A DNA stretch of 64,000 bases from Chlorokybus atmophyticus (lineage: Eukaryota; Plantae; Mesostigma and Chlorokybus algae), in the NCBI GenBank assembly GCA_009103225.1, contig RHPI01002069.1, positions 1,155,389 through 1,219,388 on the forward strand, written 5' to 3'. The notes under the pieces are model-generated. The model saw only the letters and a list, made by a program, of their open reading frames with translations, was not told the origin of the DNA and did not search any database. The position numbers were made by a program, and so were the translations under genes. Positions 4,449 through 49,499 of this stretch are shown piece by piece. How positions within the stretch are numbered: position 1 is the first letter of the stretch; each line of letters starts with the position of its first letter.

Positions 4449-6764
4449 ATGACGGCGGCGGCGTTGGCTGCCGCCACCGCATGCTCGGCCGGGTCGTTGC
4501 CGGCCAGGTTGCGCAGCCGCTGCTGCTCGGTGGCGCCTTCGCGGTCTCTGACGCAAGCAGACGTGCAGCGTGGCCAACCTCTTCTGCTTTCAGCTAGGGT
4601 TTTGTCTGTGCGGGCGAGACATTGGCGCAGCAGCCGTGTACATCATCTTGGCGCATGTCGGGCGTCTGCGCGAGAACAGCAGGCGACCAGCGACGTAGGC
4701 GAGGCTGCTGGAACAACGTCAACTTCCAGGTAAAGCCGAACAGTGTTTACGGCATGTATGAGAACCTGGTCTTAATGTGTGTAGTGGCATTGCATTCTTC
4801 GCGGAGGGTACTCTGCGTCGCTTACTACACTTGCCGCATTGCCATGCCGTCATCACTCATCAATTATACACTGACTACTTATACGCACGCGTGCGGTCGT
4901 GCTGTTACCTATTGAGCTCAATGCAATAACATGTTATGCCACTGTAGAGCCGACTGCTTAAAACTTGATACCACCAAATCGGTAACCACTGCGGGTGGTT
5001 GGGTTGGCATGGCAGATTGTATTGTGTGCATGCATGCATGTATCGTAGCTTCGTGCCATGCAAGAACTACATTGACGAACGCCTTGTCATAGGCAGGAAC
5101 TGGACTGCATTGGCACAGGTGTGGACGTTTCATGCTATGTGAAGTGCAATTCGGACGACAGCAGCAGCTCCAGCAACAACGCTGAGGACAGGAGTGGTGC
5201 GGATGCGGCAACCAGGCAGCCAACATTTACAGAGCAGCTGCTTGACAATGCGCTTCTTATTTCTCCATTCTTCTTTTGGGGCACAGCCATGGTGGCCATG
5301 AAAGGCGTTCTCCCTCTAGCAGGTAGCCTACGTAATAATCTATATGGTTCAATTATGGCACCGTCTTTGTCTGCCAGCTGCATGGTTACACTGCCTGACA
5401 CTGTTGCCATGCAGGGGAGATGTCAGTATCATCGATTAGGCTTATACCAGCGGGCATGTTATTGGTAGCATATGCCACGTACAGCGGGCGGTCCTTTCCG
5501 AAAGGCTTCCAGGCCTGGTTTGCAATCACTCTCTTCGCCCTTGTGGACGGCACCATGTTCCAGGTACGCTGCTTGCTAGCGTACACACCACTCAAAAGTC
5601 AATCTTGATTGCAGTGTGCGTTTGTTGTATTGCTCAGGGCTTCCTGGCGGAAGGGCTGCGAAGAACCAGCGCTGGGCTTGGCAGTGTACGCGTTCTTGAG
5701 TAAAGCATGTGCCAATGTGAGTGATGCAGGTGGATGGCTGTTCTCAAAAGTTGTGCGCAGGTGATTATTGACTCTCAACCTCTTACTGTTGCTCTGCTGG
5801 CGTCGTTGCTATTCGGGGAGAGGCTGTCATACATTAATGTGCTGGGTTTGGGAGTTGGGGTGGCTGGACTCTGCTTACTGGAGGCAAGCCAGCTCTGCAC
5901 GAGATTGCAGCATCCTATAGTACCCGAGTTATGTTATCAACGCAGGGACAGATTGTATGCTTGCCTTCCAGGTACCAGCAGAGACAATAGCCGCAGCGTT
6001 GTCCGATGCGCCGGGCACGGTGGCCAGGCTATGGCAAGGAGTTGAGTTCGGGCAACAGAGTGGGCTGTGGGACAGCGGCGAGTGGTGGATGCTGCTCGCC
6101 GCTCAGAGCATGGCTATAGGCACTGTCATGGTGCGGTGGGTTTGCCAGTATGTCGACCCCGTGATGGCCACAGGATGGGTGCGTGTGGGAACCTTTCAGT
6201 CGTGGCATGTTGTTGGGTGCGGGTTAGTTCAACTGACCACGTCCATTCTTGCAGCACTTACTCCTGGGTGGTGTGCCGCTTGCGCTCTTAGCTGTGGCGA
6301 AGCACGAGCCTGCAGTATCAGGCGGCCTCGCCAATCTGACATTCACCGACTACCTTTCCCTAGTGTACACATCTTTGTTTGGGAGCGCCATCAGCTACGG
6401 CGTGTTTTTCTACAACGCCAACAAAGGTTTGTTTACGACCAGCTCAGCTTTGTGCACTTGCGTGTGTGGCACCATCGAGTTTTGAGTTTTGCGTCATTGT
6501 TGAGTGCGTCACACTGTGGCACGCAGGCAACCTGACCCGCTTAAGCTCGCTTACTTTCCTTACCCCAATGTTCGCTGCTGTGTTTGGGTAAGCTCATGTG
6601 ATTTTATCTGCTGCTCACTTGTACTATGGCAACCAAGACGCGGTTAACAATGTGTGTCCTGGTTGTGCAGTTACCTCTTTCTAGGAGAGACGCTGACGCC
6701 ATTGCAACTCTGTGGAGCAACAGTGACTCTTGGTGCCATAGCGCTGGTCAATAAAAAGTCATAG
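4449..6764 (+). CDS. EamA/DMT-family (WAT1-related, probably plastid) membrane transporter (9 exons; 454 aa)
   Basis: Exons 4449-4729, 5093-5322, 5415-5563, 5638-5685, 5761-5883, 5972-6178, 6255-6426, 6527-6587, 6671-6764 sum to 1365 nt in frame; motifs ELDCIGTGVDV, SPFFFWGTAMVAMKG, RLIPAG, SAGLGSVIIDSQPLTVALLA, LSSLTFLTPMFA; multiple hydrophobic helices; one GC-AG intron. Confidence 0.9.
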
Positions 6765-7269
6765 CGGTTTCTGTGGCCAGACTAATAGATAGGGTTAGCT
6801 ACAACACATAAATTGTGATTCTACATTGCATATATTACAGCCTGTAATGCAGATGGTACGGCTCTGTCCAGGACAGGTTATGCACGTAAGCACACCAATT
6901 CATGTCTTTGGCCCCGTCCAGCAATTACTAGCATCTGCTTTCTGTGGTTTTCTCCAGGTTGCCAAGGCACCAAGCCATGCTTGCCATCAACAGCAGTAAG
7001 TGTGTTACAGAAATTCTGTCCCACAAGCTGTACATGTATCAGCTGTGTCTTGATGTGCGCATCTGGTTGATAGTCTTTGCTGAGTCATGCGACAAACAGC
7101 GGGTTTTCTTGTTCCAACCTTGCATCATGCTGGGAGGGTAACCAAGGACTCTCCGCCAAAGCTTGCACCGATCAAGGGGCTGCAATGCACTCATGTCCCC
7201 AAAGCAACAAGTCACGATGTTCAAACAACCACATGTAGTATTTACAAGCCCGTTAACGTGTACAAGCAT

Positions 7270-8503
7270 TCAATCAGAACTGAGGAACTCCGTTGCCGAC
7301 TCAGGTCCGTCATCATCATCATCAGGGAACCACAAATCATCTAAGGACAATGGTGGTAATGAAAACTCCTCTAGCCTGGACTCCCACTCCGCTGCAGGAA
7401 TACCACAGCATGAATACAGAGGTCAAATTTTGCAAGCACAATGCTGAGCACAGCTGTTGTTGGGTCTGTTATATCACTTGAGAAAGCAAGCTTGCTGAGC
7501 TGATTGCTACATGTGCTGAATCGTGCAACACATGTACATGTGCGAGCAGGTCGTCCTCAACAACCAATGACTCTCCAAGAGCAATTGTCTAGCAAGCGAG
7601 CAGCAAACTTAACACTGGGTGAAAGTACAAACATTGTGCGGATGTCTGCTGCTTGATTGAGCTGTGCTCTATGCTTGTCATGCATTTACACAAGACATCA
7701 ACCATGTATGGGAGAGAAAACAAAACTGGACACGCACTGCGTGGCTGTGCCAATGTGTGCGTGCAGCTTCACACGTATGACATTGTCTCACGTGCAAGGG
7801 GTCCGGTGCCAGCTAGCAGTGCAGCAGGAGTAGGCGGTGCTGGAGGCGAAGGGGGCATTAGGGGCGGTCTAGCCAGCCACAAATCTTCTGCCTCATTATC
7901 ATCCTTCTCCTCCTCCTTGTTGCCGCCAGCAGAGGCGCGGATCCAGTTTGCCATCGCCATAACAGCCCTGAGATTACCACCATTTTCGCGGGCGGCAGCT
8001 GCACGGCCGACAAGCTCAGCAATCTCCCTGTCCTGGGCTGCAGCCGCCTCTGCCTCAGCCCTCTCCTCCCATCCGGCCGGCGGGCCCACCTCCATTCCAT
8101 CCTTGGCCCACTCCTCCGCCCGCTGCTCCGCCCACGCCTCCCATGCGGCGTCGGAGGTGGGCGGCAATGACGCCACGGAGGTCTGTGCTGGCTTCCTGGC
8201 AGACTCCAACACTGGGGCAGGCAGCAACTTCCCGGCTGCCTTAACAGCGCTAGAAGCTCCTACACCCGGCTGCTGTTTCCCAAACCCACCCTTCTCACCG
8301 CCACCGCCGCCGCCGACCCGCTGGGCCTTGACGTTGGTGATGTCCCCGAGGGCACGCCTGGGCGTCGGCCCTGCTGCTGCTAATCCTCCTCCTCCTCCTC
8401 CTCCTCCTGCCCCCAGCTTCCCGCCCGCGGCCTTGCCGCCCCTCGCAGGCGTCGCAAACGCCGCGTTCTCATCCCGCCACGCCGTCGCCGTCCTCGCCTG
8501 CAT
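7270..8503 (-). CDS. Disordered DEN-box/D-box/WAGE-motif protein, RSS1/PATRONUS-like (securin candidate); exons 8503-7792 and 7391-7270; 277 aa
   Basis: MQARTATAWRDEN...PRRALGDITN...EEWAKDGME...; phase-1 intron (C|GTGAGA ... CTGCAG|CG) joins an acidic last exon EWESRLEEFSLPPLSLDDLWFPDDDDD..SSD*. An upstream in-frame ATG at 8572 is possible. Confidence 0.7.
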
Positions 8504-8669
8504 CCCGCCGCCGCCGCCAACAACGGCAACAACAACGACGACCCTCACACTCCCGCGCTCTGTTTGAAGCACTCAAACCCGGCTCATTGATCTCATGCCA
8601 AACGTCTACGAAATCACAGAATCACACGCAGTCGGATCAGTAACCGTCACGGGGTGCTCAGTGAACTCA

Positions 8670-9912: not shown

Positions 9913-10593
9913 ATGCCCAGCAGGTCGCTGCCGGCACAATGTACATTTCTCACGTCGGGGCAGGCGTTCGTGGGCACGCAGAATGTGTCGCACAGCAGCA
10001 GCAGCGTGACCATAGGAGATGGAGGAGTTATAGGTAGCGGAGTTATAGGCAGCGGCGCTCTGTCAGGTGGCGGTGCTCCCGCACCAAAAGATGAGGCGTG
10101 GAGCGTGAACGTGCGCGTGCAAGGCAGCAACCCGCAGTGCGGGTATGTGTGCGGCTCAATGGAGGCGCTGAACGTGCCTTCGGCGGAGTCAAGCGTGGTC
10201 ACCTTCTGGGAAGGTGAGACTGTCGACAATGTCAACTACACCTTCTTCACCCACAAGTGGGACGCCGACAGAGACACCGACATGAAGCACTGGCTTCGCT
10301 TCGATGCCTTTGCTCCCTTGCATGAAGCCGTTCTTCGTGATGGTGGTCGCTCCATCGACCTGGCGAGCTACCCCTACCTCTTCATGCGCTGGAAGGAGAA
10401 GTTCTTTGTCAATGTGGGTGCCGAGTGTGGCCTTACCATTGCCGGCTTCTACTATGTATGTTTATCTCGCCGTGACGGCTCAGTGGATGGATTCTACTAT
10501 GACCCCAACAGCAGCCCTTATCAGAAACTGGAACTGCGCCCGACGGCGGAAGGCCGGCGTGGCCACGCCTTTGCCACCTACAGTTTGTGCTGA
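9913..10593 (+). CDS. GID4: GID4/VID24-like substrate receptor of the GID/CTLH E3 ligase (single coding exon, 226 aa)
   Basis: FLTSGQAFVGTQ, YVCGSMEALNVP, VTFWEGE, TFFTHKWDA..DMKHW..F, YLFMRWKEKFFV, LTIAGFYYVC, GFYYDPNSSPYQKLEL match the GID4 family pattern. Confidence 0.92.
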   Translation: MPSRSLPAQCTFLTSGQAFVGTQNVSHSSSSVTIGDGGVIGSGVIGSGALSGGGAPAPKDEAWSVNVRVQGSNPQCGYVCGSMEALNVPSAESSVVTFWEGETVDNVNYTFFTHKWDADRDTDMKHWLRFDAFAPLHEAVLRDGGRSIDLASYPYLFMRWKEKFFVNVGAECGLTIAGFYYVCLSRRDGSVDGFYYDPNSSPYQKLELRPTAEGRRGHAFATYSLC

Positions 10594-22093: not shown

Positions 22094-22371
22094 NNNNNNN
22101 NNNNNNNNNNNNNNNNNNNNNNNNNNNNNNNNNNNNNNNNNNNNNNNNNNNNNNNNNNNNNNNNNNNNNNNNNNNNNNNNNNNNNNNNNNNNNNNNNNNN
22201 NNNNNNNNNNNNNNNNNNNNNNNNNNNNNNNNNNNNNNNNNNNNNNNNNNNNNNNNNNNNNNNNNNNNNNNNNNNNNNNNNNNNNNNNNNNNNNNNNNNN
22301 NNNNNNNNNNNNNNNNNNNNNNNNNNNNNNNNNNNNNNNNNNNNNNNNNNNNNNNNNNNNNNNNNNNNNNN
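22094..22371. other. Assembly gap (278 N)
   Basis: N run in sequence. Confidence 1.
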
Positions 22372-22993
22372 CCCCTTTTACAAGACAAAAAGCACTGCAC
22401 TCCAAAATTTTTATGCTTCTTTGATGGCGGGCGCAGGCTCTTCCAAGTAAATACGGTAGTGACGGAGCTGCATACATAGTCGTGTATATAGCACGAGGTG
22501 AGTGTGTTCTGCAGAGTGTTGCATGCGTGGTGTGGTCTGAATGGGCATACCCCTCTAGCATTTTCTGTACAACTTGTGTATGCAGCTCCATCACTACCAT
22601 TCACACGCTTGTATACCACAAGCGTGTGTATGGTGGTATGTCATTTACTGTAACAGCATATCGCGGGCCAATGTCTGCGCGCAGGAACATTCTTACGTCG
22701 AGGGGCCCAGCGTACCTTCGGCGACTGACGTGCATCGCTAACCGAGGTGCTGACACGCCACGTGGGCCGACCACTACTGCATGCTTATCCCGGAATTCAT
22801 CGGACGGCAGCGGTAACATTGACGCCATGCCCAGCACCTGAAGACCGTCGGATGTTGTATCTGGACCTCGCCGATAATTAGGCCACAAAGTAACTACCGT
22901 TTATAAATAACCTAACGTGGCTTCACCGCAGCAAGGTGGCTAACATACTTCAAGCCGCGGATGTCACGAAGGTTGCTGAGTTGAGTTTATCGC

Positions 22994-23123: not shown

Positions 23124-25894
23124 ATGGATCCCTACAAGGTGAGTTCTCATGCCTGTGCTGGTTGGTTCTGATTTGCTTCCGAGCTAGGGCTTTCTGCCGC
23201 TGGTCCCCGCATGTTGCAAAAGCCGTCGGCGCTTAGCTCTCGTTGCTGTCGGGTTGCGTGAAAGCGTCCTACATTTTGAGCGACGTTGCATGGCTGTGGT
23301 TTCCCAGGCCGTTCCGCCGGTAGCAACATGCACATCATGTGCGTGATTGTGTGCATGTCGTTGTGATTGTTAGTGTAGCTTGCTCTGCGCATGTGCGTAC
23401 CCTGTGCAGTGCAACTGGCCGGTGGGACGTCTAAATCAGCGATTGTGTGCTAGGCTCGGTTGCAATGCTTGCAGTGTGCGTCTGGGAATTTCAAGGGCGT
23501 CTTTTTGCTCCATGGCTGCGTGCGGTTCTTGTCAACCATTTGGCCATCCACTCATTGTATTTTCATTCGCAGTATCGTCCTTCCAGTGCGTACAACACTC
23601 CATACTACACAACCAACACTGGTGCTCCGGTCTGGAACAATCTCAGCTCCTTGACTGTTGGCCCCCGAGGTATGTTGTGCTTGGCAACATAACAGCATTG
23701 GTGTACTTAAGGCATGCTGTCACCACGGTCTCTCCTTCAAGTTCAGTGCGGCACTCATTGGGTTGTGGACGCAGAGGGCAATGTGTGCATAGTCGCATGC
23801 ATGGCCTTGCATGCCTGCAAAAACAATCACTTTGTCTCAATCAATCCACTGCACAAATATGCAGCATGGTTGTTGAGTGAGGAGATTGCAATGGTCGACC
23901 GAGCAGTTGGAGATTTGCCAAGTATTCGTTTGCAGGTCCTGTGCTGTTGGAAGACTACCAGTTTGTGGAGAAGATTGCCAACTTCGATCGCGAGAGGATT
24001 CCGGAGCGTGTTGTGCATGCACGTGGAGCAGTCGCCAAGGGCTTCTTCGAGGTTACGGCAGATGTCACCAATTTGACGTGCGCAGACTTCCTCCGTGCAC
24101 CTGGGGTTCAGACGCCTGTCATTCTTCGTTTTTCCACTGTCATCCACGAGCGGGGATCTCCAGAGACTCTTCGTGATCCTCGTGGTTTTGCTGTCAAGTT
24201 CTACACACGAGAGGTAAGTGCTTTCCAAGTGTGCTTTGTTAGGCTTTGCCCTTAGGTCGTGTTTTGATAATCATGTTCGGGGCCGTGGGAGGGGAGTAGT
24301 CGTTACAGCGTTTACTGGATTGATTCTTGCATGTGTCTATGCTTATATGGTGCGACTGTGTGGGCTGCTGGTTGATACTAGGTGTACGCAGTGTTGCACA
24401 GTTGTGTATAGTGGTCGCAGCATCAATTATATGGCTGCAAGCTTGTCTCCTATTGTCTGGATGTGTATGGGCAGTGAGTGCGCATCTTCAACAATTTGTT
24501 GTCTTGTTGCAGGGCAATTTTGATATGGTTGGCAACAACATCCCGGTCTTCTTCATCCGTGATGGCATGCAGTTCCCTGATATGGTGCATGCGCTGAAGC
24601 CAAACCCCAAGAGCCACATCCAGGAGGACTGGCGGATTATGGATTTCTTCTCTCACCACCCAGAGAGCTGCCACATGTTCACCTGGCTGTTTGATGATAT
24701 GGGCATTCCTCAGGACTACCGCCACATGTTCGGGTTTGGTGTGCACACCTTTAGGCTCATCAACCGCGAGGGGAAGGCCACATATGTCAAGTTTCACTGG
24801 ATCCCCAAGCAGGGCATCAAGTGCCTGCTGGATGATGAGGCTGTCCTCATTGGCGGAGCCAATCACAGCCATGCGACCAAGGTAGAACTTGTTTATTGCA
24901 GCTGACATCGATTTGCTGCCTGGCTGTTGTTTCATTCCTGGCATTTGTGGGTTAACAATTGCCCTGTTAACTTTAATCGTACATTTTTACGGATTTCTCT
25001 TTCACATTGCTGACCACATATATGTGCAGGATTTGTATGATGCCATTGCTCGTGGAGATTACCCAGAGTGGAAGTTGTGCATCCAGACCATGGACCCTGC
25101 TGATGAGATGAAGTTCGACTTTGACCCTCTGGATGACACCAAGATCTGGCCTGAAGATCAGTTCCCATTGATGGAGATTGGACGCCTGGTCCTGAATCGT
25201 AACCCAGACAACTTCTTTGCTGAGAACGAGCAGGTTGCATTCTGCCCTGGTCTCATTGTCCCAGGTATCTACTACACGGACGACAAGATGTTCCAGACTC
25301 GTGTGTTCTCGTACTCGGACACCCAGCGCCATCGCCTTGGACCCAACTACCTTCAGCTGCCTGTGAATGCGCCCAAGTGTGCGCACCACAACAACCACCA
25401 TGAGGGTTTCATGAACTTTATGCATCGTGATGAGGAGGTGAACTACTTCCCGTCGCGCTTTGACAATGTGCGGCATGCTGAGAAGCATCCCATTCCTTCC
25501 GCCACCCTGCACGGGCAGCGCGAGCGGGTAAGCGCAGTACTCTGGTTGTGTATGCTTTCTGTTGGTGCCTGGTTGAGCACTGGTTGAGTCTGCAGCAGTG
25601 GCAAATCCAGTTGCAAGTTTTGGTTTTGGTTTTGTTTGTCTGTGGTCAATTGTTAGTCTGTGCTTTTCACAGGTGTTTATTGAGAAGGAGAACAACTTCC
25701 AGCAGCCTGGAGAGCGCTTCCGCTCGTGGCCTGCTGATCGTCAGGAGCGTTTCATCAACCGGTTTGCCTCGGCACTGTCGGACCCGCGTTGCACTCACGA
25801 GATCCGGCGCATCTGGATTGGCTATTGGTCGCAGTGTGATGCTTCCCTGGGCCAGCGGATTGCCAAGCGTCTCAACATGAAGCCCAACATGTAG
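23124..25894 (+). CDS. CAT: Catalase, plant clade 1 type (6 exons; 492 aa)
   Basis: [13 protein letters not shown]..., [54 protein letters not shown]; exons 23124-23138, 23573-23669, 23936-24213, 24513-24881, 25030-25527, 25673-25894 sum to 1479 nt. Confidence 0.98.
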
Positions 25895-37967: not shown

Positions 37968-40900
37968 CTACAATCCTTGCGACTTGGCAAGCTGCGGCAG
38001 CAGACTCGTCCTCACTGGCGTCACCACACATGACTTGTTCAGCCTCCCTGTCAAGCCAGAGAGAAGCAAAGGGAACCATCAGTCCAACATGCTCTCCGTG
38101 TGTTTATGTTTATGCGCGTATGGATGCGTGCATGCGTGCGTGCGTGTGTGCATGCGTGTGTGCACCCTATGTGCGCACGCGCCCTCTGCTGACCAGTGGC
38201 AACCACACTCTCTCACCTGTTGCGAGCATGGCCGCTAGCATGGCTCTTCTCCTCGCCGGCGTGTGTCCACTCACGGCTGCTGCAATCGTACTCGTGTTTG
38301 CCTCTCCGCTGCTGTGCGGTCTTCCCGATCCTCCGGCCGGTGCGTTACCCCCTCCGAAAACCACGTCGTTGGCGTCGCGGTTCTTCAGGAGGAGAGTCAG
38401 CTGCTCCTCGGCCTGCTGAGCGGAACGGAGCTGCGCGCGCTGGAGACGACCCTCGCGCTCCAACTGCAGGGAGTGGGGTGGATGGGTGAGTGTGTGTGTG
38501 GGGGGGGGGGGGGGGGGNNNNNNNNNNNNNNNNNNNNNNNNNNNNNNNNNNNNNNNNNNNNNNNNNNNNNNNNNNNNNNNNNNNNNNNNNNNNNNNNNNN
38601 NNNNNNNNNNNNNNNNNNNNNNNNNNNNNNNNNNNNNNNNNNNNNNNNNNNNNNNNNNNNNNNNNNNNNNNNNNNNNNNNNNNNNNNNNNNNNNNNNNNN
38701 NNNNNNNNNNNNNNNNNNNNNNNNNNNNNNNNNNNNNNNNNNNNNNNNNNNNNNNNNNNNNNNNNNNNNNNNNNNNNNNNNNNNNNNNNNNNNNNNNNNN
38801 NNNNNNNNNNNNNNNNNNNNNNNNNNNNNNNNNNNNNNNNNNNNNNNNNNNNNNNNNNNNNNNNNNNNNNNNNNNNNNNNNNNNNNNNNNNNNNNNNNNN
38901 NNNNNNNNNNNNNNNNNNNNNNNNNNNNNNNNNNNNNNNNNNNNNNNNNNNNNNNNNNNNNNNNNNNNNNNNNNNNNNNNNNNNNNNNNNNNNNNNNNNN
39001 NNNNNNNNNNNNNNNNNNNNNNNNNNNNNNNNNNNNNNNNNNNNNNNNNNNNNNNNNNNNNNNNNNNNNNNNNNNNNNNNNNNNNNNNNNNNNNNNNNNN
39101 NNNNNNNNNNNNNNNNNNNNNNNNNNNNNNNNNNNNNNNNNNNNNNNNNNNNNNNNNNNNNNNNNNNNNNNNNNNNNNNNNNNNNNNNNNNNNNNNNNNN
39201 NNNNNNNNNNNNNNGGGTGCGTGCGCGTGCGCGTGTACACATATGTCTCTGTGTGGGTATGGTCTTGCACTTGTGTGTGAGTGCATGTGCGTGGGCATGC
39301 GTACCAGCGCCACAGCGTTCGCCAGTGCCGTTTCTCCCTCCGCCCGCACTTGCTTCAGCTGCGCTTGCGTCTCCAACCTACACACTCCCATTCATCACCC
39401 ACCATCACTCAACACAAAGCCCCACTTCACAACCAAATCACAATCACCAAGCTCACCTGTCGGCGGCCCGCTGCTCGCGCAACAGTCCGATCTCGCGCGC
39501 GGCCGCACGCTCCGCCTCCGCCAAACGGGAGGCAGCAGCCGACGCCGCCGATGCCAACCGCTGCTCCCCGTCCTTCCTCAACTGCACACGAGACACACAC
39601 ACACACACAAGCAGCATCAGACAAACAGCCGATCAGCAGTGTTCACACAGCAACAATCACGCACACGTAAGTGATGGTGAGTATGGTGGCTGTGTGGCAT
39701 ATGATCGTGTGCGTGTACGTAGAGACGAGAGATGAGACGGCGTGTGTGCGTGTGCGTGTGCACGTGCGTGTGTGCGTGCATGTGTCTCTCACTTGTGACA
39801 TCTGTGCGTGTGTGGCCTGTGCCGCCGCCTCCATCTCCTCTCTGAGTGCTTCCACCTGGCTCTCCGCGCCCGCGAGTGCTTCCTCCGCCCTCTCCCGCGC
39901 CTCCGACAGCACCCTCTCTCCCTCGTCGCGCATCGCTTTAACCTGACGGTCGTGCGCGGAGGCGGCGGCGGCCAGCGCGTCGCGATGCTGACTTGTCAAG
40001 TCTGATAGAGAGGCGGCGTGACGGTCCTCGAGGTGGCGGAGAGTCTCCTGCGGGTGGTACGTGTTGTGTCGGGGGTGTTCGAGACACACGCAGACGCACG
40101 CGCATGCGCATGCGCATGCGCACAGACGGCGTGTTGTTTACAAGTACCTGTTGTAGGGCCTGCTGTTCCTGCATGTGGGCACGCAGGCGCTCCCCGCGCT
40201 CGCGGGCCTCGTCGAGCTGGTGCGACACGCTCGCCAGCTCCGTCCGCACGCTCTCCACCTCCCTCACACTCGCCTGCACACGACCAGAAGATTGTGACAT
40301 CCTCGATCCACAACCCGGGTTCCGTTTGCTCGTGAACATGCACGTGAGCGCGCAGGCATCAACACACGCACCTGCAAGGCGTCTTCTGCTGTGGTGCGCG
40401 CGGCCGCCTCGCTCTCCCGCCCCGCGCGCTCCGCCTCCAGCTTCTCCTGCAGCTCCATCACTCGACTCTGAACAAATAAATACATCCAACAAGCGTCAGG
40501 TATCTCTGCTTGCGTAGTTCTGGTTCTTGTGATCCCAACACGGCTGTGTGTCTCTCACTTGTGCTGCGGCTGCGAGGGCGGCCTCGTTGTCTCTCAGGGC
40601 GGCGGCGAGGCGTGCCTCGAGCTCGGCGGCGCGGGCGGAAAGGGACGCGCGGTCGCGGCGGTCGGAATCGGACTGGGCGCTTAGAGTCTTGACCTGAAGG
40701 AAGGGACGGTGAGGTGTGGGTGTCACTATACCAGTGTCTCTACCCAACACTGTGACTGTTAATGGGGCTCGAGAGTGAGAGTCTCTCACACTGCTCACAG
40801 CACTGCTTACTTGAGCAGTGAGTTTCTCCCTCTCCGTGGCGTGCTTCTTGGCCTCCTGCTCCAGCTTGGCCTCGCGCTCAGATATACCCTGTCATGAACA

Positions 40901-46353: not shown

Positions 46354-47866
46354 TCAAGCCATCGGTGCAACTGCGTCCTGGGCATCCAGGGCAGCCTTCT
46401 TATCCAGGCTCTCAGCTTCCGTGAGAGCATCCTCTGCTTTGCGCTTGAGGCTTGCATCCGCTGGCTCCGCCTCAACGACAGGTGCAGCGGGCTTCACCTC
46501 TGCAGCTGCATCCTCTGCAGCAGCAGGTGTCTCCTGTACAGCTGGCGCAGGCTCGCAAGCAACCTCCTTTTGGTCAAACTGAGCGAGGTACTTGGATCTG
46601 CAACGCCAACGGAGAGGACGGGATTGAGAACTTTGCTAGCTTCAGCAACTTTGTCACTTGTTCAACCTCAACGAACAGCAGGGAACGGGCACTGACAACA
46701 GGCTTGCTTCACATGGCCTCGCGACCAAACTTGGCCACATATCGATTTCTGCAGGTTTATGCACATGCAGCTCAGCACATGCACATGCAACTGTCCACCG
46801 ACACACATTAACTCTGAACAAGGCAACATGCATGCATATGGCATGCACGTTTTGCTGCTAGCACGCATTGGCAATGACTGACATAATGCACATACCGGGA
46901 TGCATGCTCTTCCTGAGGTCGGTTGAGAGGTGTCCAGACAGGGTCGCCAATGAACAGGCGGAGAGCCTTGATGTAGTTGTCGCTGTCCAGACTGAACCTG
47001 TGGTAACTGCCTTCGGGTAGCACAATCATGTTGCCCGAGCGGACGAAAATGCGGATCCACTTGTCGTCGAGGTCGCGGATATCAAAGTAGCCACTGCCCC
47101 CAAGCACAACACGGATCTCCTATTGCAGTTGTTTCGTCACGTCAGTGACTTCAGCTTCAATCTTGCACGCAATGCACACCAGCGGCGACAACACATGCTA
47201 CACAGTTGACGACAAGCTGTCAACAACAGCTGCACAGGAGCTACCATCGTGCCCGCTGCATGATGAAAGCAGTCAACCAAGTCACTGCCTTTTGCAGTGA
47301 CAGCAGATGGCGCTGGTCAGAAGCGTAAGGTGTAGTAAGGTGACAAGCGGTGTTACGGGGTACCAGCAATGCCTTGCACACAGCCCTGAGCGCTTGCATT
47401 GCATGGGAAAATACCCCATTCGTAGACAATGGCATTGCAAGGGAAGACATGCATGTCAGTACACAAGCAAGGCCAACGAGCTGTGCCTGGCCCATACCTC
47501 GTCGGTGTGAATATGCTCCTCGTAGAAGTACTTCAGCTTCTGCTCGTAGTTCTCCAGCTTCTCCGGGGACACCTCAATGATGTCCATGTAGCTGTAGCCG
47601 CGCTCCTCCCGGAGTTTGGCGAGCAGCGGGTCGTGTTCCGGGTCCTTGGGGTCCAGCTTCCAGGACAAGACGCCCAGCTTCTCGAGCATCTCGACGCTCA
47701 CGGTGGCGTCCTCCCCAGCCCGCCGGTGCGGCAGACGCTGGTCCTCATTGCTGTCGTCCATGTACCACGCCTCCAGGTCGGGAGCCTGTTGCTGCTCCAC
47801 AGCCTTGCTGGGGACGTCCGCCGCCGGCTCGGCCACAGCCACGGGCGCCTCCATCGCAGCAACCAT
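46354..47866 (-). CDS. ARD: Acireductone dioxygenase (methionine salvage, cupin); exons 47866-47498, 47119-46896, then either 46748-46709 or 46597-46354
   Basis: [69 protein letters not shown]; possible upstream exon/extension near 48,000. Confidence 0.95.
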
Positions 47867-49499
47867 GATGACAGGCCTTCTGAGACCACACAGCACCTGT
47901 CGCAAAACAACCCCGCCGCGTACCCCGCCAACCCCGATGATGACAACGACACAGACGTTATAGTAAGCCACTAGGTGTACTTTGATGCTTTCCACTTGCT
48001 GGCTGCCCTGGTGCGGGTGTCGGCTGTGTGGCGCAGTGCGCAATCTCGGGAGGGTTGCCCGGCTGCGGGGTTTGCTCATTCAAGTGCGCGCGGCCTGTGC
48101 CACGTTGCTCTCTCCTGTTGGTCACATGCTCGCGGGCAAACCGGTGTGCGCTGCTTCCTTCCGTTGTCACTGCGCACGTTTCCCGCCATTCATGACGTGC
48201 ATGAAACGTTGCTTTTTCCCCTCTTGGGTTCCATCGTGTGCAAATCCCCCCCCCCCGCTAAAGTACTTTGCCAGCTGCCCGCCTGCAGTATGTAAGCTGA
48301 TTTGTATGTGCGCTAGTTCCATTAGCAATGCGCACGTTTCCCGCCACTCCAAACTATCATAAAACATTTCTTTCACACCCTCTCCAATGAACGCTTGAAC
48401 ACTCCATTATAGAGTCTACATTGAAAAGTCTCTATGTGTCGTGTTCAGTCGTACGCAACTCTCATATCATGTGACATTTCGGCTACCTCATTTGTGGATT
48501 CATTTCTTGTATACTGACAGCAGTCATGATGTATACATGTCTTAAAGTTACCATACAAGAGTACCCATAGTGCATGTATACATAAACGCAAATGCCAAAT
48601 TTTGTATACCATGCCACAACATTTGCGTGTGTAAATCATGTATATCTTGTGTATCGTGCTGGTAGCCATTGTGCAAGCTAGTGCTTGATATCCACCCTCA
48701 TGGTGAATTCGGTGTTTTGTTCCCTGGGAGTCGAGATGACGGCCTGTGATCTCAAGTGTTTACAATGCCTTCGATTGCATGCTCTCAGCCTTATGTATGT
48801 CGGCTAGCTTGTCAACCATGGCGGCGACGCGGCAATATGCGTGGCCTAGCAAAATCAAGGCTAGCCCCGTGAGCGCCGGCCTCCTCGCAGCAAATGCGGA
48901 GAAGGAGATGGAAGTGACGGAGCCGTGTTGGGGCGGCATAGCGATGGTGATCCCACCACCCCCGCTCACCCGACTGTTGACTGGTGCGTGGCCTAGCTGG
49001 TACATGCCAGCATACAGGTCACCTCTCCGTTTTCGTGGCAGCCCCTTCCCATGCGCGCGTACGAGCCAACGTGGAAGGATGGATCTAGCAGCTGCTCTAC
49101 CACACCTTACTTCTGTGTGGGAGGAGCGACATAGTGCTAGTGTCACCAATCAGGGTGATCTTCTCTTAGTGCCCCCTTTCCGGATATGCAGGGGGTTGTG
49201 CCAGTCTGGTGAGCCCGGCTGGTCACACGCGTGGTGTCAGCAACAGCGTTGTACACGAGGTTGCCATGCACTGCACCGCTCCGTAGTGCGATGGCACACC
49301 AAGCCACCTGATCCCGAAAAAGATGCAGGCTAGAATTGTTGAGAATAACTGTACATGTGCAACCGTAACACTTGTGCTGCTCTGTGCATCAGAGATGTTG
49401 CTCGCTGTGTGTCGACGACCTGGTCATGCCTCAAATGTGAAAACTCAATGTTGACCAGGACAGCGAGCTCCCCTACCCCCTCCAATTGGTTCCTTCCTC

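What the first reader, a model, noticed from the sequence alone, without database searches (positions are those of the whole stretch)
7270..8503. Algal RSS1/PATRONUS-like securin candidate (DEN-box, D-box, WAGE motif)
Seen: a 277-aa low-complexity, acidic-tailed protein with WRDEN near the N-terminus, RRALGDITN (canonical RxxLxxxxN destruction box) and WAKDGME (W-A-x-x-G-x-E); its true last exon (7391-7270) is hidden from the ORF track. Established: rice RSS1 has DEN-box, D-box and WAGE motifs, and Arabidopsis PATRONUS (DEN/KEN + D-box) is the plant securin and an APC/C substrate. Inference: this is a divergent algal member, potentially the elusive algal separase inhibitor; such proteins escape normal BLAST because only short motifs are conserved.
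Basis: partly seen in the sequence, partly recalled or inferred. Interest (0 to 1): 0.72.

Follow-up and report, generated by a model that had tools for sequence, protein, structure and literature searches.

The report
Green-algal RSS1/PATRONUS-type securin candidate
This small, mostly disordered algal protein carries, in the same order and almost the same positions, the signature motifs of the plant RSS1/PATRONUS securin family, so it is probably this alga's anaphase inhibitor; algal members were already reported in 2019, which makes it a new member and not a new kind.

Summary
On the minus strand, exon 1 (8503-7792) encodes DEN at residues 11-13, RRALGDITN at 49-57 and WAKDGME at 132-138. 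A GT/AG intron (7791-7392) can join it in frame to a 39-codon acidic exon (7391-7270), giving 277 aa. The motifs are far beyond chance: the strict WAGE pattern is expected 0.005 times per window.

Single-sequence searches, Pfam and PDB found nothing. Rice RSS1 also has no Pfam family, so that blank says little. A degenerate DNA search for the WAGE motif retrieved real grass RSS1 genes, including rice RSS1. They place DEN at 11-15, the D-box at 40-46 and WAGE at 92-125, followed by a near-invariant E-[IF]-L-P and an acidic tail. The algal protein is collinear with this, and exon 2 supplies E-F-S-L-P-P and the acidic tail.

Statistical homology to the grass proteins is only weak: the grass HMM ranks this ORF first of 2333 pieces at E 0.074. 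The splice is not covered by any read data.

Cromer et al. 2019 already reported algal PATRONUS/RSS1 homologues with the WAGE glutamate conserved, so "elusive" is overstated. The scan also noted this same stretch once more from another window (s1-190680).

Verdict: probable family member and likely APC/C-degraded separase inhibitor. It is a new member of a known kind, of modest interest.

The parts
7792..8503 (-). Coding exon 1: ATG at 8503, 237 whole codons plus the first base of a split codon. It encodes the disordered N-terminus and a helical middle part.
   Evidence: Translation. The ORF is listed. AlphaFold single-sequence model: residues 1-110 have pLDDT below 50, with helices at 118-134, 145-173, 178-193 and 198-209. 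Run X1 has exact contigs at 7900-8089 and 8169-8331.
8465..8473 (-). DEN box (residues 11-13, context AWRDENAAF), a KEN-type APC/C degron.
   Evidence: It sits at the same distance from Met as in 18 grass RSS1-family proteins, where [DNS]EN lies at residues 11-15.
8333..8359 (-). Destruction box RRALGDITN (residues 49-57).
   Evidence: The first D-box of the family lies at residues 40-46. hhalign of the grass profile aligns exactly this segment.
8441..8452 (-). TPAR (residues 18-21), a full CDK consensus site just after the DEN box.
   Evidence: The regulatory meaning is inference.
8354..8365 (-). TPRR (residues 47-50), a full CDK consensus site overlapping the first Arg of the D-box.
   Evidence: The regulatory meaning is inference.
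8090..8110 (-). WAGE motif WAKDGME (residues 132-138), followed by VGPP. Glu138 is the candidate pseudosubstrate residue, in the context E-V-G-P with no Arg at P1.
   Evidence: The motif is defined in PMC3104554 and its Glu is proposed as the separase-inhibiting residue in PMC6690013. In the model the motif lies in the break between helices 118-134 and 145-173.
7392..7791 (-). Predicted 400-nt intron, GTGAGA...CTGCAG, GC 0.465 against 0.669 in exon 1.
   Evidence: It is not verified by reads. Run X3, which looks like DNA, has a contig at 7440-7619 inside it.
7270..7391 (-). Predicted terminal coding exon: 2 bases of the split codon, 39 codons and the stop TGA at 7272-7270. It forms the acidic tail.
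   Evidence: Of 58 AG acceptors downstream of the donor, this one has the best pyrimidine tract plus CAG and gives the only hydrophilic acidic peptide.
7351..7368 (-). E-F-S-L-P-P in exon 2. It resembles the near-invariant E-[IF]-L-P of grass RSS1 proteins (EILPE in rice RSS1, EFLPP in the paralogue).
   Evidence: The loose pattern E[IF].?LP occurs only twice in 127,996 six-frame residues of the window. The pattern was defined after seeing the data and was not picked up by the grass HMM.
7309..7341 (-). Acidic run DDLWFPDDDDD in exon 2, the counterpart of region III.
7242..7246 (-). TGTAA, the candidate polyadenylation signal, 24 nt after the spliced stop.
   Evidence: The convergent neighbour's transcript contig ends at a TGTAA too. 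The role of UGUAA in green algae is from general knowledge.
7769..7771 (-). Alternative stop used if the intron is retained (protein ends RETMSYV*). TGTAA at 7690-7686 could serve that form.

Best explanation
The locus is a two-exon gene for a 277-aa (244 aa if unspliced), largely disordered protein. It is the green-algal member of the RSS1/PATRONUS family, the securin of the green lineage. The likely mechanism follows, and each step is inferred from the family and from securins in general; none is shown for this protein. The N-terminal DEN box and D-box are read by APC/C with CDC20 or CCS52, so the protein accumulates from S phase to metaphase and is destroyed at anaphase onset. The two CDK consensus sites next to the degrons (TPAR, TPRR) may delay ubiquitination while CDK is high. 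Until destruction, the middle and C-terminal part lies along separase. Glu138 of the WAGE patch (E-V-G-P, with no Arg at the cleavage position) would occupy the active site as an uncleavable pseudosubstrate. The E-F-S-L-P-P and acidic tail would contribute further contacts. A second or alternative role as a PP1-binding regulator, as described for rice RSS1, is possible.
For: All motifs are present and beyond chance. The architecture equals the published family definition of regions I, II and III (PMC3104554). PMC6690013 shows Arabidopsis PANS1/2 bind separase and APC/C, links them to RSS1 and to algal proteins by iterated PSI-BLAST, and states that the WAGE Glu is conserved into algae. A degenerate WAGE DNA pattern fetched 94 metagenome loci. 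The 12 of plant origin, which are grass RSS1 genes, all carry upstream D-boxes, and none of the other 82 ORFs does. The profile search then returned rice RSS1 itself, P0052, whose KTVIF and HVLF fall at the residue positions given for RSS1 in PMC12109034. Positions are collinear: DEN at 11 here against 11-15 in the family, D-box at 49 against 40-46, and WAGE at 132 against 92-125. MAFFT aligns DEN-x-RG-GK, the D-box, KGxxxK and EWAKDGxE in register. With the WAGE residues masked, local alignment of the N-terminal 90 residues still beats shuffles for several members: z 3.5-4.0, with 1-3 of 500 shuffles reaching the score, for P0072, P0071 and P0020. A grass-only HMM ranks this ORF first of 2333 six-frame pieces at E 0.074, with the next at 9.5. 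The protein is 73% disorder-promoting residues and has a low-confidence N-terminal half. In ESM Atlas feature space, rice RSS1 and this protein share the same first named neighbour, chordate securin PF04856. This is lead-level evidence only.
Against: No statistically solid homology was found. phmmer against 1.84 billion representatives returned zero hits, as did two word searches and tblastn in metagenomes. hhalign to the grass profile reaches only 66% probability, on the D-box alone. The HMM score is only 9.4 bits. Short degrons and an 8-residue patch can arise convergently: EWAKDG[VI]E is also conserved in a large unrelated prokaryotic enzyme family. Position 6 of WAGE is Met, not the published V/I. 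The Cys two residues before EW and the FTGND block, invariant in grasses, are absent. Exon 2 shows no significant similarity to family C-termini and its splice is unverified. No algal, moss or dicot family member could be obtained for direct comparison. Separase or APC/C binding was not testable.
Confidence: 0.62

Rival explanations
1. It is a true RSS1-family member, but its main job in the alga is to regulate protein phosphatase 1 or the G1-S transition, as proposed for rice RSS1 and wheat TdRL1, and not to inhibit separase.
For: RSS1 binds OsPP1 through its middle region, and the rss1 phenotype is a stress-dependent cell-cycle defect (PMC3104554). TdRL1 inhibits TdPP1 in vitro (PMC12109034). 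Securin function has been shown only for the dicot PANS1/2.
Against: No RVxF-type motif ([RK]x0-1[VI]x[FW]) is present in exon 1, whereas RSS1 has KTVIF and HVLF. Cromer 2019 argues that all family members are securins and that the WAGE Glu is the inhibitory residue. The two roles are not mutually exclusive.
Confidence: 0.15
2. It is an unrelated, lineage-specific APC/C substrate or other disordered protein. On this reading the DEN box, D-box and WAKDGME arose independently, so the resemblance to RSS1 is convergent or chance.
For: All database searches with the protein itself were blank. Profile statistics are marginal. The WAGE octamer recurs in an unrelated prokaryotic enzyme family. Low-complexity Ala/Gly/Pro-rich sequence inflates casual similarity.
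Against: The joint occurrence of three motifs in the family's order, at nearly the family's residue positions starting from Met1, is very improbable by chance. Similarity of the N-terminus survives masking of WAGE. The literature reports that the family extends to algae with just this motif conserved.
Confidence: 0.17
3. It is not a real protein-coding gene, only an open frame in GC-rich low-complexity DNA. The opposite strand also has a 304-codon ORF.
For: There is an overlapping + strand ORF at 7653-8567. No gene product is on record in the public collections. Transcript evidence is thin: two low-depth contigs in a run only guessed to be RNA.
Against: The motif set exists only in the minus frame and is far beyond chance. 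The gene fits its surroundings, with a 3' end convergent with the + strand transporter-like gene that ends near 6842 and a promoter region divergent from the Vac_ImportDeg gene at 9913. Consensus splice sites and a TGTAA signal are in place.
Confidence: 0.05

Closest known systems
Rice RSS1 (Os02g0606700; P0052 here) and its grass orthologues
   Same: Small disordered protein (243 aa against 277). DEN at residue 12 against 11, even with a similar start (MAAPTATAVFLDEN against MQARTATAWRDEN). A D-box of the R/KxALxD[IV][ST]N type. EWAKDG[VM]E in the middle. An acidic C-terminus with E-[IF]-(x)-L-P.
   Different: There is no detectable global similarity. Grasses have 1-3 D-boxes, an invariant Cys before EW, the block HFTGND and KKKVEK-MSAL, and RVxF-like PP1 motifs, all absent here. 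The alga has Gly/Ala runs, Met at WAGE position 6, VGPP after the Glu, and a longer WAGE-to-LP distance (114 against about 70 residues).
Grass RSS1 paralogue (Os01g0898400 type; P0072, P0073, P0065, P0071)
   Same: This is the closest of the sequences obtained. It has N/D-EN at 11-15 followed by F-RG-x-GKKAG and Ala runs, RRALGDL as the D-box core, S-D-x-x-W a few residues before EWAKDG, and EFLPP in the C-terminal third.
   Different: Its D-box ends in K or R instead of N. It has CCEW instead of EEW. Similarity is significant only against shuffles (z about 4), not at database level.
Arabidopsis PATRONUS1/2, the experimentally established plant securin
   Same: An N-terminal DEN/KEN box plus D-box read by APC/C-CDC20, a small disordered protein, and a conserved Glu-containing patch proposed as pseudosubstrate (PMC6690013).
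   Different: Dicot PANS lack the WAGE motif and have E-x-F-L-H-D/N-H instead.
Published green-algal homologues (Ostreococcus lucimarinus XP_001422400.1; Micractinium conductrix)
   Same: The same claim, an RSS1/PATRONUS relative in Chlorophyta with the WAGE Glu conserved, was made in 2019.
   Different: These are different species, and their sequences could not be fetched here, so identity and orthology are untested. None has been tested functionally, and a 2022 Chlamydomonas study still speaks of a 'hypothetical securin analog' (PMC9448001).
Animal and fungal securins (PTTG1, Pds1, Cut2; Pfam PF04856)
   Same: The same logic applies: N-terminal KEN/D-box degrons, intrinsic disorder, and a Glu-containing pseudosubstrate lacking the P1 Arg (human EIEKFFP, PMC6858450; here E-V-G-P-P). 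An L-P-x docking-type motif lies downstream. Chordate securin is the first named neighbour in Atlas feature space.
   Different: There is no sequence match to PF04856 or to securin chains in the PDB. Any relationship is at most very remote.

Membership tests
RSS1/PATRONUS (green-lineage securin) | Region I: DEN/KEN-type box close to the N-terminus | tested here: met
   DEN is at residues 11-13. In 18 grass family members [DNS]EN lies at 11-15.
RSS1/PATRONUS (green-lineage securin) | Region I: D-box RxxLxxxxN downstream of the DEN box | tested here: met
   RRALGDITN is at 49-57. The family's first D-box lies at 40-46. hhalign aligns this segment.
RSS1/PATRONUS (green-lineage securin) | Region II: WAGE motif W-A-K/R-D/E/G-G-V/I-E with its conserved Glu (PMC3104554, PMC6690013) | tested here: met
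   WAKDGME is at 132-138. Six of seven positions fit the published pattern, position 6 is Met instead of V/I (a conservative change), and the Glu is present.
RSS1/PATRONUS (green-lineage securin) | Region III: acidic C-terminal region | tested here: met
   Exon 2 has 14 D/E and 1 K/R in 39 residues, against 8-12 D/E in the last 40 residues of family members. This depends on the unverified splice, although exon 1 also ends with an acidic patch (NKEEEKDDNEAED).
RSS1/PATRONUS (green-lineage securin) | Near-invariant E-[IF]-L-P about 70 residues after WAGE (seen here in grasses, probably the 'C-terminal third' Glu of Cromer 2019) | tested here: inconclusive
   Exon 2 has E-F-S-L-P-P with one inserted residue, 114 residues after WAGE. 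The pattern is rare in the window, but it was defined after seeing the data and was not detected by the HMM.
RSS1/PATRONUS (green-lineage securin) | Statistically supported sequence homology to accepted members | tested here: inconclusive
   The grass HMM ranks the ORF 1 of 2333 pieces at E 0.074 and 9.4 bits. hhalign gives 66% probability. Shuffle z reaches 4 with WAGE masked. phmmer and word searches were blank. The literature needed 7-13 PSI-BLAST iterations to join algae with RSS1 and PANS.
RSS1/PATRONUS (green-lineage securin) | Small, intrinsically disordered protein | tested here: met
   The protein is 277 aa, with 73% A/G/P/E/K/S/Q/R residues. pLDDT is below 50 over residues 1-110, and only four helices are predicted in the C-terminal half.
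RSS1/PATRONUS (green-lineage securin) | Binds separase and APC/C co-activators, with D-box-dependent degradation | not testable with these tools
Animal securin (Pfam PF04856) | Match to the Securin profile | tested here: not met
   There was no Pfam hit at E up to 10 for either exon. The only link is a feature-space neighbour at 0.85.
OSD1/UVI4/GIG1 APC/C inhibitors (considered because they also carry a D-box plus a GxEN/KEN box) | C-terminal MR tail (family definition recalled from memory) | tested here: not met
   The spliced protein ends ...EFLSSD and the unspliced one ends ...RETMSYV. Neither ends in Met-Arg.
PP1-interacting proteins of the RSS1/TdRL1 type | RVxF-type docking motif | tested here: not met
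   There is no [RK]x0-1[VI]x[FW] in exon 1. Rice RSS1 has KTVIF and HVLF.

The most novel reading that the evidence does not exclude
The WAGE glutamate followed by a downstream E-[IF]-L-P-[EDP] element may form a two-part separase-binding module conserved from chlorophyte algae to grasses. It would copy the layout of cohesin itself, where the cleavage site is followed by an LPE exosite motif 50-100 residues downstream (PMC6858450). In the alga the module would read E-V-G-P-P and E-F-S-L-P-P, with CDK sites gating both degrons. If so, this gene would be the missing 'securin analog' of chlorophyte multiple-fission cycles, and it would fix which of the two candidate glutamates discussed by Cromer 2019 does what.
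Probability: 0.3. Interest if true: 0.5.

Novelty: new member of a known kind. Interest (0 to 1): 0.3.

Why it matters
Securins evolve so fast that genome annotation usually leaves them as hypothetical proteins. No gene product for this locus is on record in the public protein collections searched here. A motif-and-position match gives this alga a concrete candidate for the APC/C-controlled inhibitor of separase. In green algae that role has so far been inferred only from sequence, and the Chlamydomonas genetics papers still call it hypothetical. The candidate is directly testable, for example by D-box mutants, by converting the pseudosubstrate into a cleavage site, and by separase binding. 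The grass-to-alga comparison also points to which residues are ancient: DEN at residue 11-12, the D-box core, EWAKDGxE and possibly E-[IF]-L-P. The family and its presence in algae are nevertheless already published, so this finding extends existing knowledge and does not change it.

Tried and rejected
- Pfam scan of both exons: no family at E up to 10. This is uninformative, because rice RSS1 itself has no Pfam family.
- Word-index protein search with exon 1, over the whole sequence and over residues 105-237: no hit.
- phmmer against 1.84 billion representatives: 0 hits at E <= 0.001, not even a self-cluster.
- PDB sequence search: only Gly-linker noise.
- The search for related loci in metagenomes: 329 pattern matches, none confirmed by tblastn.
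- Exact look-ups of the unspliced 244-aa ORF and of the neighbouring Vac_ImportDeg ORF in public assemblies: not on record. As a result, neither the organism nor a public gene model could be obtained.
- Reads: four runs, all contigs. None spans 7792/7391, none covers exon 2, and one (X3) covers part of the intron and looks like DNA. The splice therefore stays open.
- Grass HMM and local alignments against exon 2: no signal.
- Plant-type MSA (AACGG) and E2F promoter motifs within 800 nt upstream of the ATG: one CCGTT and no E2F site, which is background density.
- The supplement of Cromer 2019 with the algal alignment is not held, so no published algal sequence could be compared.
- OSD1/UVI4-type APC/C inhibitor: rejected because there is no MR tail.
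- Complex prediction: not run, for want of a separase or CDC20 sequence.
Full report
**What is there**

On the minus strand, an ATG at 8503 opens a frame of 237 codons. It begins MQARTATAWRDEN. It holds RRALGDITN at residues 49-57 and WAKDGME at 132-138. It is rich in Ala, Gly, Pro and Glu, with 73% disorder-promoting residues.

The frame meets a consensus donor, CAC|GTGAGA, at 7792/7791, 22 nt before its own stop at 7769. Four hundred bases downstream an acceptor, TTCCTGCAG|C, at 7392/7391 restores the frame through a split Pro codon. It adds EWESRLEEFSLPPLSLDDLWFPDDDDDGPESATEFLSSD and a stop at 7272-7270. A TGTAA lies 24 nt after that stop, and another lies 79 nt after the unspliced stop.

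The gene sits between a convergent + strand transporter-like gene and a divergent Vac_ImportDeg (GID4-like) gene at 9913-10593. For the transporter-like gene, a run X1 contig confirms the last intron (6589-6669) and a 3' end near a TGTAA at 6844.

**Is it more than chance?**

Yes. In the six-frame translation of the whole window, the strict WAGE pattern occurs once, against 0.005 expected per shuffled window. R.ALGDI.N occurs once, against none in 200 shuffles. DEN occurs three times, one of them here.

**Searches with the protein itself**

All of these were blank:
- Pfam.
- Two word-index searches.
- phmmer over 1.84 billion cluster representatives.
- PDB sequences.
- tblastn-confirmed metagenome loci.
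- Exact look-ups.

This fits what is published for the family. Cromer et al. needed 4 to 13 PSI-BLAST iterations to connect PANS1, RSS1, mosses and an Ostreococcus protein (PMC6690013). Pfam has no model for the family, because rice RSS1 itself gives no Pfam hit.

**What the literature defines**

Ogawa et al. 2011 define RSS1 homologues by three regions (PMC3104554):
- Region I: a DEN-box plus D-box or D-box-like motifs.
- Region II: the "WAGE" motif W-A-K/R-D/E/G-G-V/I-E.
- Region III: a moderately conserved acidic C-terminal region.

Cromer et al. 2019 show that Arabidopsis PANS1/2 bind separase and APC/C and act as securin. They argue that RSS1 is the monocot counterpart. [quoted passage not shown] They propose it as the pseudosubstrate residue. 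A 2022 Chlamydomonas paper still refers to a "hypothetical securin analog" (PMC9448001). Algal members therefore remain functionally untested.

**Getting real family members**

I searched the metagenome contigs with a degenerate DNA pattern for E-W-A-K-D-G-[VIM]-E. It gave 94 loci. About seventy are long prokaryote-type ORFs with the block MDIEWAKDGxENKLYIVQA. This enzyme family is unrelated, which shows that the octamer alone is not diagnostic.

Twelve loci are plant contigs in which CHEWAKDGVEG, or CCEWAKDGVET in one, is preceded in the same frame by one to three D-boxes (RKALQDVSN and the like). Where exon 1 is included, a DEN is also present. None of the other 82 ORFs has an upstream RxxLxxxxN.

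A profile of these plus the algal exon 1 (A1) then returned 75 grass proteins. Among them is rice LOC4329928/Os02g (P0052, 243 aa). It carries KTVIF at 103-107 and HVLF at 165-168, exactly the positions quoted for RSS1 in PMC12109034. P0052 is therefore RSS1. A second grass subfamily (P0065, P0071-P0073) is probably the RSS1 paralogue mentioned by Cromer et al.; that identity was not checked here.

**Comparison**

| Feature | Alga | 18 full-length grass members |
|---|---|---|
| [DNS]EN box (residue) | 11 | 11-15 |
| First D-box (residue) | 49 | 40-46 |
| WAGE (residue) | 132 | 92-125 |
| E-[IF]-L-P after WAGE | E-F-S-L-P-P, 114 residues after | near-invariant, about 70 residues after |
| D/E in the C-terminal tail | 14 of 39 (exon 2) | 8-12 of the last 40 |

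- MAFFT puts DEN-x-x-[IF]-x-RG-x-GK, the D-box, a KGxxxK patch and EWAKDGxE in register.
- The very N-termini resemble each other: rice has MAAPTATAVFLDEN and the alga has MQARTATAWRDEN.
- The paralogue shares S-D-x-x-W just upstream of WAGE, Ala runs after the DEN box, and RRALGDL.
- Exon 2, which played no part in any search, supplies the E-F-S-L-P-P and the acidic tail. The loose pattern E[IF].?LP occurs only twice in the 128,000 six-frame residues of the window. The unspliced form would end RETMSYV and lack both features.

**Statistics of homology**

These remain weak:
- A grass-only HMM ranks the ORF first of 2333 six-frame pieces, but at E 0.074 and 9.4 bits, aligning the D-box through WAGE in one domain.
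- hhalign gives 66% probability, on the D-box segment only.
- With the fished WAGE residues masked, Smith-Waterman scores of the N-terminal part exceed all but 1-3 of 500 shuffles for P0072, P0071 and P0020. This does not hold for rice RSS1 itself.
- Exon 2 gives no signal.
- Grass-specific invariants are not shared: the Cys before EW, HFTGND and KKKVEK-MSAL.
- The ESM Atlas gives a parallel picture for the two proteins. Chordate securin (PF04856) is the first named neighbour of both rice RSS1 (rank 15, score 0.89) and the algal exon 1 (rank 20, score 0.85). This is a lead, not a test.

**Structure**

A single-sequence AlphaFold model has low confidence (mean pLDDT 57). It shows a disordered N-terminal 110 residues holding both degrons, then helices at 118-134, 145-173, 178-193 and 198-209. 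DGMEVGPPAG forms the break after the first helix. This is compatible with an extended pseudosubstrate segment.

**Mechanism (inferred)**

- Two full CDK consensus sites, TPAR at 18-21 and TPRR at 47-50, abut the degrons. They could modulate recognition, as is known for yeast securin (from general knowledge).
- Separase cleaves after ExxR. Securins present a Glu-containing pseudosubstrate without the Arg: human EIEKFFP becomes cleavable when FP is changed to RE (PMC6858450). Here the WAGE Glu is followed by V-G-P-P, that is E-x-x-P.
- That paper also describes an LPE docking motif downstream of the pseudosubstrate in securin, and 50-100 residues downstream of the cleavage site in Scc1. The family's E-[IF]-L-P-[EDP], which is EILPE in rice, may be its counterpart. 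This is my speculation.
- No RVxF motif is present, so the PP1 link of RSS1 is not evidently conserved.

**Gene model caveat**

The four runs that hold parts of the stretch are assembled contigs. X1 has exact pieces inside exon 1 (7900-8089 and 8169-8331) at low depth. X1 is probably RNA, since it carries the neighbour's spliced junction. X3 covers part of the intron and the upstream region and looks like DNA. No run shows a joint or covers exon 2. I put the splice at about 65%.

Following the operators' note, exons were searched separately by reference, and the joined 277-aa sequence was not submitted to any tool.

The scan's index holds one other note on this same stretch read from another window (s1-190680). 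It makes the same proposal and is not independent evidence.

**Verdict**

- The family assignment is probably right, at about 0.7 for membership and about 0.6 for securin function.
- The "elusive" framing is overstated, because algal homologues were published in 2019.
- This is a new member of a known kind. Its interest is modest, and it is raised a little by the testable pseudosubstrate-plus-docking idea and by the lack of any functional work on algal securins.

Noticed in passing
metagenome loci L001-L094 (e.g. L001:5712-5735): The octamer E-W-A-K-D-G-[VI]-E is also part of a conserved block, MDIEWAKDGxENKLYIVQA, in about 70 long prokaryote-type ORFs of 500-1300 aa. By my recollection these are PEP-synthase-like, but this was not tested. 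The WAGE motif alone is therefore not family-specific.
   Followed up: partly
P0001-P0005, P0010-P0013 (grass proteins of 340-380 aa); L048:7080-7697: Some grass RSS1-family proteins are tandem duplications of the whole unit. They have two sets of D-boxes and two WAGE sites, the second degenerate (CHEWANDMSEG).
   Followed up: no
window 5957-6842 (+): A convergent neighbour with a membrane-transporter-like C-terminus (no Pfam hit for the two ORF pieces tried). A run X1 contig confirms its last intron, 6589-6669 (GTAAGC...TGCAG). The contig ends at 6842, right at a TGTAA (6844-6848).
   Followed up: partly
window 9913-10593 (+): A single open frame of 226 aa matching Pfam Vac_ImportDeg (GID4/Vid24 type, E 1e-44). 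It is divergently oriented to the securin candidate, with about 1.4 kb between the two start codons.
   Followed up: partly
window 8194-8205 (-), residues 100-103: ESAR, a minimal separase cleavage consensus (ExxR), lies between the D-box and the WAGE patch. ExxR is common, so this may mean nothing.
   Followed up: no
window 8587-8596 (-): Two short upstream ORFs (7 and 4 codons) start at ATGs 8596 and 8587 in the presumed 5' leader, in frame with the main ATG but closed by a stop.
   Followed up: no
window 22100-22500 and 38500-39200: Runs of N (assembly gaps). The window comes from a draft assembly.
   Followed up: no
window 24327-25587 (+) and 47456-48079 (-): Catalase exons (Pfam Catalase, E 3.5e-64) and an ARD/acireductone dioxygenase exon (E 1.9e-16). 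These are ordinary housekeeping genes.
   Followed up: partly
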